This document shows, in pieces, positions 37,489 to 49,400 of a stretch of DNA of 64,000 bases; within the stretch, counting starts at the first letter, position 1, and every line of letters begins with the position of its first letter. The stretch is from Sminthopsis crassicaudata (Eukaryota), in NCBI RefSeq assembly GCF_048593235.1, contig NC_133619.1:649676558-649740557 (forward strand). The letters are read 5' to 3'. Both the position numbers and the translations under genes were made by a program. The notes under the pieces are model-generated. The model saw only the letters and a list, made by a program, of their open reading frames with translations. It had not been told where the DNA came from and ran no database searches.

Positions 37489-40400
37489 ATGAGTGGACCC
37501 TCGCCTGGGCCCGGGCATCTGCTGAACGTGGTGGCGGTGAGTGTCCCTGCTGCGGAGGAAGGAGCCGGAAGCTTGCAGCCACCTCCCTGGCTGCCAAAGG
37601 CTCGCGGGGGTTGGGGCCACCAAGCCGTCGAGGGACTGGGAGCTCGAGGAGCGGGTGGTCAGGTCACTGAGAGAGTGGGGTCTCTGGGCCTAAAGGGTGG
37701 GCGACGGAGGAAAGTTCCAAAGACCGGGACTGCTAGGTCCCGTCATCCTCTCTGACACCCGCTGGAAGCAATTTTGTGTTCCTTCCGGACACCATCCACC
37801 CACAAGCTTGTCTTGGACGGGCGAGTCGCCGGCTTTGTTCTTCTCCTAGAAGTCCCCGGCCCTGCCTCTGCCCTTGCTCTGGGGGTGAGGAGCCCTCTTT
37901 CTCTTGGCCTGGAGCCAATGGCGATGGCTGAATATTCATGGCAACCGATCCACAGGCTTGGGTTTCCCCCAAACTCCTTCCTCCCTCTCTCCCTCCCAGT
38001 AAATGGGCGGGCTGAGACTGGGGTGAACTTTGTCTGAAGGAGGAGCTGAGAGGGAATTCCAGCCCAGCCCTTCAGCAGAGGCAGAGAGCTCTGATGTCAC
38101 CCTGTAAGTATTCTTCCTAACAGGTCCTGGTGTGCTGGACAGTGTCCTTGGCAGCTGGTGAGTGGCAGACAGCTTCCCGGGCCTTCTGTTTACCCCCAAA
38201 CAGAGGGTCCTTCCCAAGCCAGTCTGGGATGTGTAAGGGCTTTGGGGAATTCCCGGGGTTCCCTTAAGTGCTTCCCTAGCTGACCCTTCTCCTGCCTGAA
38301 TCTCAGCCCAGGTGGAGATCTCAGCCTTGCAGGTGACCAAGCAGACCAATGTCTCAGTCACCCTGAAATGGGAGCCACGTAATGAGAGCTCTCCGAAGTA
38401 TAGCATCACCTGGGCTAAGGACGGCCAGCACATTGGGACAAACAGCACGTCAGATCCTCACTACACTGTGGAGAACCTGGAACCTGGAACCCTCTATGAG
38501 TTCACGGTCACAGTGGACGGAACCAGCCCTGGAAAGAGCCTTAAGGCATCCACCGGTGAGACTTAAAGATAATAAAATATATATTTATACGATTATTTTG
38601 CTGCACAAGAAAATCAAATCCAAAGGGGAAAATATGAGAAAGAAAAGAAAATTCCTGTGATATTTTTAAGCCTTATGGAAAGCCTCAAGTCCCGTGATTT
38701 TAGTGGGAAGAAGGGAGAAGTTTGAAACAAAAGGACCCCTGAAGGCATGAATCTAGGCCCTACTAGGTACTTCTGACTCCTGGACAGCTCCACCTCAAAC
38801 TCAAAGGCTCCTTTGCTGGAGAGCATCTCCCACCAGGGGAATTCCCCACCAGGTCAATCCAGGGCCTCAGTATGTCACCTCTGCTCTTGGGGACTTGGTG
38901 GGGAGATATGGGAAGCCTTCCCCTGCAGACTCTTACTTCTCTCTTCTCATGAAGTACCCAATGAGGTCAGAGAACTCAAGATGACAGCCCGGAGTAACAG
39001 CTCAGTCACCCTGCAGTGGAAGGTCCCTGAGGGCCCCGAGTATACAGACTACACCTACTGGATCAGCTGGACCAGTGAGAATGGCCTTGTTGGGGGAGCC
39101 AGCACAACAGAGACGGAGCATGTGGTGGAAGGCCTGGATCCTGCCACTGAGTACAATTTCACAGTGAAGGCTGAGAGGAATAATGTCAGCAGCTCTGGCC
39201 TGAGCCTCCTGGTGACCACAGGTGAGATGGAGGCTGGGTGTTGGGGTGATGCTGTGGCAGGTGGGACAGGGAGCCTGAGGTCTCCTGAGCACATGATGAG
39301 AGCATGGAGACCTCAGGTTTGAGCCCAGAAATGGCAGCATCTCAGAGCAGGGAGGAACCAGAGGCCATCTCTTCCCACCCTTCATTTTCAAGAAGCCAGA
39401 ACTGGGGGGCTTTGGGGAAAAGAGAAGGGGGAAAAGGGGAAGAAGGCTCCAGCCTTGCATCCTTCAGGGGTTCAGACCTCCCTGAGTTTCCTTTGACTTC
39501 ACAAATTAACCATCATTCTAATCATCTACCATGGGCCCTTCACCTAGCAAGCACCCATAGTGTGCAAGTGTGAGAATAGCAAAGTCATTCACAGCTGGTG
39601 ATCCTGGAACACTGCTTTGTACACAGAACATTTCACTTTGCTTGAGCTCATGGAGGACTTTCAGGTTTTTTCTGAGAGCATCCTGCTCATCATTTCCCAC
39701 AGAACAATAATATTCGATGATAATCCCAGTTTATTCAGCCTTTCCCCAGTTGTTGAGCATCCTCATAATTTCCAATTTCCTGCTCTAAGAGAAGGACTAC
39801 AAATCTCTTTGTACATATAGGCCTTTTTCCTTTTTAAAGGTTTCTCTTGGTTTGCATGTCCAGTAGGGGTCCAAGAATATGACTGAATTCAGATAGTCCT
39901 TTGGGCACAGATCATATCTTTTGCTCATTTATCAGTTAGGGGCTTAGTTTTTATAAATTTGATTCAATTCCCTCTAAGTTTGAGGAGCAAGGCTTATCAG
40001 AGAAACTTGTCTCAAGATTCTTTTTACATTTACTATTGCTGACTGTATGTCCCTGCATTTACTTTATCCTCTCCCTCCTTTCACCCTGTCTGTCCTCAAA
40101 AGTGTTAGGCTACGGACCACTGCCCTCACTACCTTTATTCTAGTAACAATTATTATGGTTCTGTCCAAGGAGTTTTCCTTTATGTGGGTTATACTAATAG
40201 ATGCTGACAATATTAGAAATTAGAACTAATTTGAATTAATGGCTTTCAGAGACCCCCAGGATCCTTGGGAGTGTACTTGGAAACTCCCAGCTCGAGAGCA
40301 GAGTTTCTGTAACTTTTTCCACTCATAAGCTCTTTTTTACTGTGAAACTTTTAATGTGAACCCGTTACATAGGAGCATAGAACAGGTATAGAAAGCAGAA

Positions 40401-46400: not shown

Positions 46401-49400
46401 AGTCCTCAAAAGTGTTAGGCTACTGACCACTGCCCTCACTACCTTTAGTCTAGTTGTGCTTTCATTGCATTTACTATTATCAGTCTCTCCTAATTCCTAG
46501 GGCTTCAGGCTACATCTGGCCACTGACTTTTACAGTGCCAACTAATTCTACCAAGTCGCCTCCTCTGAGGCCTGCAGGGGTCTCTGGCCACGATTTCTTG
46601 AATGGTAGTTTAATAACCGATAGCTCGCTCAACAACAGCCACTGCAAACTTAAACCTTTATTATACCTGCTCACATAATGCCCTGACAGATTATCTCCCT
46701 AGTGAACACCTGGCCTGAAGACCCATGTGTTCACTATCAAGCTCCTTACCTTTCTTGGCTATCCATCCACTGGGCTCAGCTACACCAGGATAAAGAGAGC
46801 GACGTGCTGCCCAAAGTGGGCTAAAAAAGGGTCTGGGAAGTCACACACACAACCAACCAGGGAGAGAACCAGCTTCTGTTATGAAGCTATGTGGATATGG
46901 CCGGGATTCTGCCCAAGGCAGTGCCTAGCCACAGAAAATTACTTCTGAGCCACTCAAATCTCCTCTTGCACTGTGGCTGCCCACTTAAAGGACCGTTACT
47001 TACATCCAGTGACAGTTGTTCTGGTTTGTCCAAAGAGTTTTCCTTTATGTGGGTTATATTTATGGATGTTTACCATATTAGAAATTAGAACTCATTTGAA
47101 TTAAAGACTTTCAGAGACCCCCAGGATCCTTGGGTGTGTACTTGGAAATTCCCTGCTCTAGAGCAGAGCTTCTCAAACTTTTTCCACTCAAAAGCTCTTT
47201 TTTACTCTGAACATTTTAATGTGAACCTGGTATTTTGAAAACAATTCTTTAGTGTACATATACTTTCATTATTATTAAAGGTGAAAGCAAATTTGTGTAT
47301 TAATGAGAAGGACGTGATTGTTTATTTTTGATATAAAGAATTGAATCTTGATGCAATATTTGATACCTTTTACTGTTGCCAAATTCTTGACCCCATGTGG
47401 GGACTTGACCACATTAGACCATGAGGTAAATCAAGGCCAAGTGGTGAAGGGCATTTTTGATCCCACAGGTAACAGGAGGGGCAGGGGGGATGGTTGTGGA
47501 GCTGGACCATGACTTGGTTCACTTGTGCTTTGAGAATATTGCTTTGGCAGCTGAGTGGAGGGGATCCAGACTGGGCAGGGACTGGAGCTGTGCTGGAGCA
47601 TGGGCAGCTGCTCCTCACTACTTGTACTTCTCTCTTCTCATGAAGTGCCCAATGAGGTCAGAGAACTCAAGATGACAGCCCGGAGTAACAGTTCAGTCAC
47701 CCTGCAGTGGAAGGTCCCTGAGGGCCCCGAGTATAAAGACTACAGCTACAGGATCAGCTGGACCAGTGAGAATGGCCTTGTTGGGGGAGCCAGCACAACA
47801 GAGACACAGCATGTGGTGGAAGGCCTGGTTGCTGCCACTGAGTACAATTTCACAGTGAAGGCTGAGAGGAATAATGTCAGCAGCTCTGGCCTGAGCCTCC
47901 TGGTGACCACAGGTGAGATGGGGGCTGGGTGTTGGGGTGATGCTGTGGCAGGGGGCACAGGGAGCCCGGGGTCTCCTGGACACACGATGAGAGCATGGAG
48001 ACCTCAGGTTTGAGCCCAGAATGGCAGCATCTCAGAGCAGGGAGGAACCAGAGGCCGTCTCTTCCAACCCTTTCCTTTCAAGAAGCCAGAACTGGGGGTC
48101 TTTGGGGAAAAGAGAAGGGACAAGAGTGACCCCTGGGCTCCAGTCCTGCCCCCCTCGGGAAGCCTTCCTCGCCCCCTCCGTGCCATTCCGCCTCCCCAAG
48201 CCTCCCTGGGCCCTGCGGAGGGTTGTGGAGCCCCACCTTCCCCGGCTGGACGCCAGTGCTGCCCTCCCTCCGGCCCTGCTCTGGCCCCCTTCCTCACTCC
48301 TTGTCCTCTCGCTCCCAGTGCCCAACGAGGTCACCGAGCTGCAGGTGCTGAGACAGACCAATACCTCCATCTCCCTCAGTTGGGCGGGCCCCGAGGGAGC
48401 CGGGGGTCTCAGCTACAGCGTGGCCTGGGTCTCCTCTGGGACCGAGGAGCTCAGACTCACCAAGGAGCCCCGCTTCACTGCTGAGGGCCTCAGCCCTGGC
48501 TCTTGGTACCGGTTCTTGGTGAGGTCCGTGACAGCGGACGGGACCCAGGGTCCAGCACGTGCCATCAATAGCTCCACAGGTGAGGTCCGAGCTGGAGGGA
48601 GGGGAAAGGGCATCGGCCATGTGGAGGAGACCTTCCTGCCTCCCTCCCCCAGAGGAGGCTGCTGATGGACCTCCAGGCCGGGCCCTGGGCTGATGGGCTG
48701 TCCAGGAGTGGGCGGTGTGGAGGGGGAGGGGGCGGCCAGATCCCCTTCCCGATGGCCGCTGACCCGGCCCGGATGTGGTCCTCTCAGCTCCAGACCCTGT
48801 CACCATCACCTCTTGTGCTAGTGCGGCTGGGGGCTACGGGGTCGTCCTGGCCCTGGCCTGTCCTCCGGGGGGCCAGGAGAGGTTGGAGCTGGAGGTGGGG
48901 GACCAGAAAGTGGTGCATGCTGGGCCCTGTGCCAGCCCCCTGTCCATTAGGGGCCTGCAGCCGGCCCGGTCCTACCCAGCCATCGTCCGGAGCCTCTGGG
49001 CAGGGATGACCGCCATCTCAGCCCCTGTGACCTGCTACACTGAGAGTGGGGGTGAGACCAGGAGGGAGAAGGAGGCCGGAACCGAGGGCTCTCAGGGAGG
49101 AAGGCCGGGGAGAGGGAGGCCAGGGAGAGGGAGGCCTGGGAGAGGGAGGCCAGGGAGAGGGAGGCCAGGGAGAGGGAGGCTGGAACCCAGGGCTCACAGG
49201 GAGGGAGGCCAGGGAGAGGGAGGCCAGGGAGAGGGAGGCCAGGGAGAGGGAGGCTGGAACCCAGGGGTCTCAGGGAGGAAGGCCAGGTGGGGGGTGAGGT
49301 TGATGTAGCGGCTGAGGCAGGTTAGCCCTCCTCAAGTCCCTCTGTGTCTCCCCCCACTCCCTGCCTAGGGGTCATAGCTGGAGCCATCATTGGAGTCCTC

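What the first reader, a model, noticed from the sequence alone, without database searches (positions are those of the whole stretch)
38935..48120. Most of the PTPRH ectodomain is built from a recently amplified exon cassette
Seen: five of eight FN3 exons are 267-nt copies in ~1.85-kb modules whose introns are also nearly identical. All five are in frame with intact GT-AG sites. The left boundary is about 20 nt upstream of copy 1 and the right boundary about 200 nt after copy 5. Established: human PTPRH also has 8 FN3 and 20 exons and sits on intestinal microvilli. Inference: this lineage reached the same domain count by independent, recent turnover of a single exon, so ectodomain length may be constrained while its sequence is repeatedly rewritten. 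The array should also be prone to copy-number variation.
Basis: partly seen in the sequence, partly recalled or inferred. Interest (0 to 1): 0.75.

Follow-up and report, generated by a model that had tools for sequence, protein, structure and literature searches.

The report
Tandem FN3 exon array in dunnart PTPRH
Five of the eight extracellular domains of a gut-surface phosphatase (PTPRH) in the fat-tailed dunnart come from one exon copied head-to-tail; the same exon has been copied or homogenised separately in most mammals sampled, so this is a real example of a known kind of gene evolution.

Summary
Five 267-nt, phase 1-1, AG/GT-bounded FN3 exons lie in a tandem array at 38934-48119. It has four full modules (1845, 1852, 1886 and 3108 nt) and a 495-nt partial one. 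Exons are 91-98.5% identical and introns 92-96%.

The gene is PTPRH of Sminthopsis crassicaudata. NCBI's 1093-aa model contains all five copies at 100% identity. DNA contigs from another study span the left boundary and a module-to-module junction. An RNA-like contig joins one copy directly to the next.

An ML tree of 68 marsupial FN3 domains puts the first and last FN3 by position. The array copies cluster by species, even among three dasyurid genera.

Among the 56 PTPRH models analysed, 44 carry two or more FN3 domains at least 80% identical. Of those 193 domains, 183 are closest to a domain in their own protein. The dunnart array is therefore one case of continuing unequal crossing-over and gene conversion.

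The idea that ectodomain length is held at eight is not supported. Canonical FN3 counts run from 2 to 13, and are 6, 7 and 12 in three dasyurids.

I found no paper describing this. The scan holds another note on this same stretch (s1-170963) and nothing on other DNA.

The parts
38934..48119 (+). Whole tandem array: four full modules plus a 495-nt partial fifth
   Evidence: Self-BLAST offsets of 1845, 3697, 5583 and 8691 nt; block edges at 38934 and 48119
38934..40778 (+). Module 1 (1845 nt): 21 nt of intron, exon copy 1, 1557-nt intron
40779..42630 (+). Module 2 (1852 nt)
42631..44516 (+). Module 3 (1886 nt)
44517..47624 (+). Module 4 (3108 nt), with two private inserts
47625..48119 (+). Module 5, partial: exon copy 5 plus 207 nt of intron
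38955..39221 (+). FN3 exon copy 1, type A (BC loop [10 protein letters not shown])
   Evidence: AG/GT, 267 nt, open; Pfam fn3 E=1.7e-11; 100% match to NCBI model P0156 aa 112-199
40800..41066 (+). FN3 exon copy 2, type B ([10 protein letters not shown]; two extra N-glycosylation sequons)
42652..42918 (+). FN3 exon copy 3, type B
44538..44804 (+). FN3 exon copy 4, type A
47646..47912 (+). FN3 exon copy 5, type A, with private changes (T30K, T33S, W35R, D61V, P62A)
   Evidence: its private letters are present in contigs of runs X11 and X12
45102..45821 (+). Interspersed-repeat (L1-like) insert private to module 4, flanked by a 10-nt target-site duplication CCATCATTCT
   Evidence: Similar copies at 25630-26245 (85%), 16962-17632, 19431-19817 and 30227-30665; modules 1-3 have the empty site once
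46455..47004 (+). Second insert private to module 4 (about 550 nt); no other copy in the window, origin unknown
38307..38555 (+). First FN3 exon of PTPRH (249 nt, phase 1-1), outside the array, position-conserved
   Evidence: Pfam fn3 E=2.2e-12; boundaries read; clusters by position across marsupials 99/94
48319..48579 (+). Last canonical FN3 exon (261 nt, phase 1-1), outside the array, position-conserved
   Evidence: Pfam fn3 E=5.9e-10; sequence; clusters by position 100/99
48788..49051 (+). Membrane-proximal beta-rich domain exon (264 nt), counted as the eighth FN3
   Evidence: 82-86% identical to devil PTPRH models, 99% to P0156; no Pfam hit; seven predicted strands at pLDDT 54; boundaries
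49369..49453 (+). Transmembrane exon ([29 protein letters not shown])
50769..54278 (+). Exons of the single phosphatase domain and C-terminal tail (WPD loop 53464-53625; HCSAGVGR split across 53622/53832; YEN tail)
   Evidence: Pfam Y_phosphatase; motifs; best solved structure is PTPRH 7xc0

Best explanation
This is a real tandem array inside the PTPRH (SAP-1) gene of the fat-tailed dunnart. The unit is one 267-nt FN3 exon plus its downstream intron, about 1.85 kb. Because the exon is phase 1-1 and a whole number of codons, any number of units stays in frame, and each unit adds one FN3 domain to the ectodomain. The array was built and is kept similar by unequal crossing-over and gene conversion between misaligned units. 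The five present copies trace back to a common sequence younger than the split of Sminthopsis from the devil and antechinus lineages. It is the local state of an old array of this one exon type, the second-position FN3. That array has expanded, contracted and been homogenised separately in most mammalian lineages sampled. The first FN3, the last FN3 and the membrane-proximal domain stay fixed by position. Shown: the structure, the in-frame exons, clustering by species, differing copy numbers among species, the mosaic pattern, and copy-to-copy splicing. Inferred: the recombination mechanism, the age, and any selective cause.
For: Structure and splice sites. Mosaic similarity: the 5' half of the exon groups M1=M4=M5 against M2=M3 (15 differences in 150 nt). 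Intron 39507-39900 groups M1=M2=M3 (0-4 differences per 150-nt window) against M4 (13-17). The intron tail groups M1=M2=M4 against M3. One duplication order cannot give this; repeated exchange can. Module 4 carries a private retroelement insert with a target-site duplication, and modules 1-3 have the empty site, so the modules are distinct loci. NCBI's Sminthopsis crassicaudata PTPRH model (P0156, 1093 aa) contains all five copies in order at 100% identity, and the whole protein is accounted for in the window. In one search, DNA run X4 (study P3) has a contig across the left boundary (38582-38978). A back-joint 40778->38934, the module-to-module junction, is present in X4, X12 and X11. Record 16 of X13 joins 39103-39219 to 38953-39019, which is one exon copy spliced to the next. 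Tree of 68 marsupial FN3 domains: first FN3 by position 99/94, last FN3 by position 100/99, all array copies one clade 99/91. Inside that clade the clusters are Sminthopsis 5 (100/89), Notamacropus 10 (100/98), Macrotis 3 (100/99) and all dasyurids together (100/99). Across the 56 PTPRH models analysed, 183 of 193 array domains are closest to a domain of their own protein. This holds even between congeners: Ochotona 97-98% within against 86-87% between, and Peromyscus californicus 100% within against 82% between (Peromyscus maniculatus is weaker, 84% against 78%).
Against: The exact copy number could not be checked by read depth or spanning long reads, because every run offered was kept as contigs. 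Independent amplification and homogenisation of an inherited array therefore cannot be separated module by module. Many of the orthologues are automatic gene models; some 100%-identical runs or low counts may reflect collapsed assemblies or partial models. No contig of the RNA-like run X13 showed the private letters of copy 5, so its inclusion in mRNA rests on NCBI's model only.
Confidence: 0.85

Rival explanations
1. A single recent burst: the dunnart lineage started from one exon and amplified it to five copies de novo, with no inherited array.
For: The five copies form one well-supported dunnart-only clade. Modules 1-3 are 99-100% identical over several hundred nt.
Against: Most marsupial models sampled already have at least two copies of this exon type: koala 2, bilby 3, Dromiciops 5, wallaby 10, opossum at least 4, antechinus 4, devil 10; Petaurus, a partial model, shows none. 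An inherited array is therefore more parsimonious. Types A and B differ by about 10% in the 5' half of the exon while other segments are near-identical, which needs several events of different ages.
Confidence: 0.2
2. Assembly artefact: the array is over-expanded, for example by haplotypes or reads stacked in tandem, and the true gene has fewer copies.
For: Tandem repeats of about 2 kb are a known weak spot of assemblies. No raw reads were available to measure depth.
Against: Copies differ by 1.5-9% in exons and 4-8% in introns, far above allelic differences. Module 4 has a private retroelement with a target-site duplication. Module 5's private letters and the module junction occur in contigs of runs from other studies. 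Devil, wallaby and many other species show the same architecture.
Confidence: 0.04
3. The array is real, but some copies are skipped or non-functional exons, so the mature protein usually has fewer than eight FN3 domains.
For: dN/dS among copies is about 0.6-1.8, so purifying selection since duplication is not visible. Copy 5 has W35R and D61V/P62A, and copy 4 has P1L. No X13 contig carried copy 5's private letters. Antechinus models come as isoforms of 833, 922 and 1011 aa, steps of exactly 89 aa or one exon.
Against: All five have intact AG/GT sites and open frames. NCBI's single dunnart model includes all five. An RNA-like contig joins consecutive copies, and contigs matching types A and B are both present. 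Across 36 species, core fold positions never vary within arrays.
Confidence: 0.15

Closest known systems
PTPRH (SAP-1) of other mammals, e.g. human (eight FNIII domains, microvillus-specific)
   Same: Same gene by best hits, domain order and neighbours. FN3 ectodomain, one transmembrane helix, one phosphatase domain, C-terminal YEN motif. Most species sampled also have a run of near-identical FN3 domains.
   Different: The copies are not orthologous one-to-one. Each lineage has its own homogenised set and its own count, from 2 to 13 canonical FN3. Dasyurids lack the penultimate FN3 type found in koala, bilby, Dromiciops, Petaurus and Gracilinanus.
LPA kringle IV-2 and DMBT1 SRCR exon arrays (coding tandem exon modules; from general knowledge)
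   Same: Kilobase-scale modules of exon plus intron repeated head-to-tail, in-frame domain gain and loss, and unequal recombination as the accepted mechanism.
   Different: Copy-number polymorphism within a species, their hallmark, was not testable here. The PTPRH unit has one exon of 267 nt; KIV-2 has two exons in 5.5 kb.
Other R3 receptor phosphatases (PTPRJ, PTPRB, PTPRO, PTPRQ)
   Same: Same architecture class: FN3 repeats plus a single phosphatase domain.
   Different: The window's phosphatase exon matches solved PTPRH far better than PTPRJ or PTPRB (E 1.9e-22 against about 1e-10). Whether the paralogues also homogenise their FN3 repeats was not tested. The 2017 evolutionary study left FN3 repeats out of its trees.

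Membership tests
PTPRH orthologue (R3 receptor tyrosine phosphatase) | Several extracellular fibronectin type III domains | tested here: met
   Pfam fn3 on the first exon, the copies and the last FN3 exon, E 6e-10 to 2e-12
PTPRH orthologue (R3 receptor tyrosine phosphatase) | One transmembrane helix followed by a single phosphatase domain with a WPD loop and HCx5R | tested here: met
   TM exon 49369-49453; Pfam Y_phosphatase; WPD and HCSAGVGR each occur once in the model
PTPRH orthologue (R3 receptor tyrosine phosphatase) | Closer to PTPRH than to paralogues | tested here: met
   Solved PTPRH 7xc0 is the top single-domain hit; the best named relatives are nearly all PTPRH; P0156 (Sminthopsis PTPRH) is 99-100% identical over all ectodomain exons compared
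PTPRH orthologue (R3 receptor tyrosine phosphatase) | Conserved neighbours (TMEM86B on one side, DNAAF3 region on the other; gene order from general knowledge of the human locus) | tested here: inconclusive
A YhhN-family gene, most likely TMEM86B (the only mammalian neighbour of that family I know of here), lies upstream on the same strand.
PTPRH orthologue (R3 receptor tyrosine phosphatase) | C-terminal YxN tyrosine motif | tested here: met
   YEN in the last exon of P0156, which maps to 54132-54278; the motif is described
Tandem coding exon array under concerted evolution | At least three head-to-tail units, each holding a whole exon and intron | tested here: met
Tandem coding exon array under concerted evolution | Symmetric exon phase, so copy-number change keeps the frame | tested here: met
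   267 nt, phase 1-1
Tandem coding exon array under concerted evolution | Copies within a species more alike than copies between species, while flanking domains follow the species tree by position | tested here: met
Tandem coding exon array under concerted evolution | Exchange between units (mosaic similarity) | tested here: met
Tandem coding exon array under concerted evolution | Copy-number polymorphism within the species | not testable with these tools
   Only Logan contigs were available; the tool states that depth is not a copy number

The most novel reading that the evidence does not exclude
The second-position FN3 exon of PTPRH is a mammal-wide hot spot of concerted evolution. On this reading, copy number and loop glycosylation (type B copies here gain two N-glycosylation sequons) are targets of selection from gut microbes or pathogens acting on a brush-border surface protein. 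Copy number would then also be polymorphic within species.
Probability: 0.25. Interest if true: 0.7.

Novelty: new member of a known kind. Interest (0 to 1): 0.45.

Why it matters
PTPRH is usually drawn with a fixed eight-domain ectodomain and has no known ligand. The data here show that most of that ectodomain is a fluid array. Its domain number (2-13 canonical FN3) and sequence are reset lineage by lineage, while the domains next to the signal peptide and next to the membrane stay put. This argues against a conserved ligand-binding role for the middle domains. It points instead to a length- or glycan-bearing spacer or decoy role in the microvillar coat, which could be tested by comparing natural alleles. 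It also warns that FN3 domain numbering in PTPRH cannot be transferred between species, and that short-read assemblies and gene models of this gene will often be wrong.

Tried and rejected
Tandem Repeats Finder cannot see the 1.85-kb period because its maximum period is 500; the repeat finder and self-BLAST were used instead.

The membrane-proximal domain has no Pfam hit at E<=0.01. Single-sequence AlphaFold models of that domain and of copy 1 were low-confidence (pLDDT 54 and 62). No fold search was run on them.

Copy number could not be measured by depth. All 24 runs are kept as contigs, and the word depths (about 66-71 on the unique flank, 128-241 on array contigs) are explicitly not copy numbers, so I do not use them.

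The length-constraint idea is rejected on the cross-species counts.

I looked for strong loop-specific diversification across 36 species' arrays and found only a mild excess: BC loop 0.23 and G strand/linker 0.25, against 0.12-0.14 in strands.

Literature searches found no description of FN3 exon turnover in PTPRH.

Exons were searched one by one by reference, and NCBI's own model returned by the protein search served as the joined form.

Human PTPRH entered only as protein rows among the orthologues that the search returned. No human DNA was touched. The N run at 49967-50370 was left as it is.
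Full report

Yes. Self-BLAST of 36-52 kb gives one block of direct repeats from 38934 to 48119, with offsets of 1845, 3697, 5583 and 8691 nt. The repeat finder gives start-to-start spacings of 1845, 1852, 1886 and 3108 nt.

Placing the exon of module 1 (38955-39221, read) at the same offset in each module gives five 267-nt segments. Each is preceded by AG, followed by GT and open in the same frame. The frame shows phase 1-1, so each exon adds exactly 89 codons.

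A MAFFT alignment of the modules gives these identities:
- Exons: 90.6-98.5%.
- First 215 nt of intron: 93-96%.
- Rest of the intron: 91.6-96.0%.

Module 4 is 3108 nt because it has two private inserts of about 730 and 556 nt.

The first insert (45102-45821) is an interspersed repeat. Other copies lie in the AT-rich block of the window, for example 25630-26245 at 85%. It is flanked by a 10-nt target-site duplication, and modules 1-3 have the empty site once.

**2. What gene is it?**

Exons were searched one at a time by reference.

- Pfam finds fn3 in the exon at 38307-38555, in the three copies scanned (1, 2 and 5), and in the exon at 48319-48579. It finds Y_phosphatase further downstream and a YhhN-family gene, most likely TMEM86B, upstream.
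- The WPD-loop exon matches the solved PTPRH catalytic domain (7xc0) at E=1.9e-22. PTPRJ and PTPRB score about 1e-10.
- A profile-free search of 1.8 billion representatives with copy 1 returned devil, opossum and other PTPRH models.
- A word search with the opossum C-terminal half returned about 115 named PTPRH orthologues.
- One of these, NCBI's PTPRH of Sminthopsis crassicaudata (P0156, 1093 aa), contains copies 1-5 in order at 100% identity, plus the last FN3 and the membrane-proximal domain.
- Every part of that protein is found in the window. The N run at 49967-50370 lies in an intron.

So the window is from the fat-tailed dunnart, and the gene is already annotated as PTPRH with all five copies.

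The eighth domain (48788-49051) has no Pfam fn3 hit. Its only model is low-confidence, with seven strands. The count of eight follows the convention used for human SAP-1.

**3. Are the copies real and used?**

Only contigs of public runs were available, so depth cannot give a copy number. I laid four runs on one module plus its unique left flank (37400-40778). The results, all, were:
- DNA run X4, from another study, has a contig across the left boundary (38582-38978).
- A back-joint 40778->38934, the junction of one module with the next, is present in X4, X12 and X11.
- Contigs of X11 and X12 carry the private letters of module 5.
- Record 16 of X13 joins 39103-39219 to 38953-39019. That is the end of one exon copy spliced to the start of the next. 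By its letters it is the copy 1 to 2 junction or the copy 3 to 4 junction.
- Other X13 contigs match type A and copy 3.

Together with the 2-9% divergence between copies and the private retroelement in module 4, this makes an assembly artefact very unlikely. The exact number of modules per haplotype remains unverified.

**4. History**

A sliding-window comparison shows a mosaic:
- In the 5' half of the exon, modules 1, 4 and 5 are alike and differ from 2 and 3 at 15 of 150 positions.
- In intron 39507-39900, modules 1-3 differ at 0-4 positions per 150-nt window, while module 4 differs at 13-17.
- In the intron tail, modules 1, 2 and 4 group against 3.

No single order of duplications gives this pattern. 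Repeated unequal exchange or gene conversion does.

dN/dS between copies is about 0.6-1.8 on small counts. The A/B differences are concentrated in codons 22-31. By the Pfam fn3 alignment and a low-confidence model, these lie in the B-C loop. Type B gains two N-glycosylation sequons. This agrees with the scan's other note on this stretch.

Intron divergence of 4-8% suggests millions to a few tens of millions of years for the deepest splits. Near-identity among modules 1-3 suggests much younger exchange. These ages are my inference from general mammalian substitution rates, not a measurement.

**5. Comparison across species**

I cut FN3 domains out of 58 named PTPRH models with an HMM built from the window's exons.

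An ML tree of 68 domains from ten marsupials shows:
- The first FN3 forms one clade by position (99/94).
- The last FN3 forms one clade by position (100/99).
- A penultimate type is present in five non-dasyurid genera (94/91) and absent in dasyurids.
- All array copies form one clade (99/91). Inside it they cluster by species: dunnart 5 (100/89), wallaby 10 (100/98), bilby 3 (100/99), and all dasyurid copies together (100/99).

It comes out in favour of lineage-specific turnover.

The same holds outside marsupials. Across the 56 models analysed, 193 domains have a partner at least 80% identical in the same protein. Of these, 183 are closer to a domain of their own protein than to any domain of another sampled species. 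This is true even between two pikas and for one of two deer mice.

Canonical FN3 counts run from 2 in water buffalo to 13 in North American porcupine, with a median of 6. Antechinus, dunnart and devil have 6, 7 and 12. The match with human's eight is therefore most likely coincidence, and a constraint on length is not supported.

One caveat applies: many of these are automatic models, and some counts will be wrong.

**6. Mechanism and meaning**

The best reading is an old array of one exon type that is continually expanded, contracted and homogenised by unequal crossing-over and gene conversion between 1.85-kb units. The phase 1-1 exon tolerates this.

Core fold positions never vary within arrays in 36 species, and loops vary slightly more. 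The copies therefore look like working domains.

Why PTPRH does this is not shown. Human SAP-1 is prominent in intestinal epithelium and microvillus-specific. A role as a glycosylated spacer or microbial decoy is a reasonable but untested idea.

**7. Novelty**

Tandem exon arrays with concerted evolution are a known kind, and the gene model is already in RefSeq.

I found no paper describing FN3 turnover in PTPRH. The one evolutionary study of R3 phosphatases excluded the FN3 repeats from its trees.

I rate this a new member of a known kind, of moderate interest. The interest comes mainly from the mammal-wide pattern.

Noticed in passing
window 34835-36200 (+): A YhhN-family gene, most likely TMEM86B (lysoplasmalogenase), lies directly upstream of PTPRH on the same strand. 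This fits the conserved gene order as I recall it from the human locus.
   Followed up: partly
window 16000-32000: An AT-rich block (GC 0.30-0.36) sits between GC-rich flanks (0.6-0.69). It is full of L1-like fragments, and copies of the element inserted in module 4 lie here.
   Followed up: partly
window 33077-33557: A very regular 38-nt minisatellite, 12.7 copies at 96% match, just upstream of the TMEM86B-like gene. It is open in all three forward frames because of its period.
   Followed up: no
window 49063-49287: A GC-rich 15-nt minisatellite (GAGGGAGGCCAGGGA, with higher-order 74- and 104-nt periods) in the PTPRH intron between the membrane-proximal exon and the transmembrane exon.
   Followed up: no
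window 4-1337, 13487-13657 and 59200-59414: Further GC-rich minisatellites with units of 23/44 nt, 24 nt and 10/30 nt. The region as a whole is rich in them.
   Followed up: no
window 48099 -> about 48461 (run X11, record 1): A contig from a run labelled as another organism runs from the module 4 intron tail through exon copy 5 and 187 nt of its intron. It then jumps into the middle of the last FN3 exon, and there are no GT/AG sites at the joint. It may be a mis-joined contig, a deletion allele or a related species; this is unexplained.
   Followed up: partly
proteins P0160-P0165 (Antechinus flavipes PTPRH isoforms): NCBI lists many isoforms (numbers up to X23 appear) with lengths of 833, 922 and 1011 aa, steps of exactly one 89-codon FN3 exon. 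This hints at exon skipping within the array, or at ambiguous read placement.
   Followed up: no
tree; window 47913-48318: Dasyurids lack the penultimate FN3 type found in koala, bilby, Dromiciops, Petaurus and Gracilinanus. The intron after copy 5 is only 406 nt, and the array ends abruptly 207 nt into it. A deletion may have removed that exon and the tail of the last module.
   Followed up: no
window 47748-47750 (copy 5, codon 35): Copy 5 alone changes the strand-C tryptophan (YWISW to YRISW) and has D61V and P62A. It is the most altered copy, and no contig of the RNA-like run X13 carried its private letters.
   Followed up: partly
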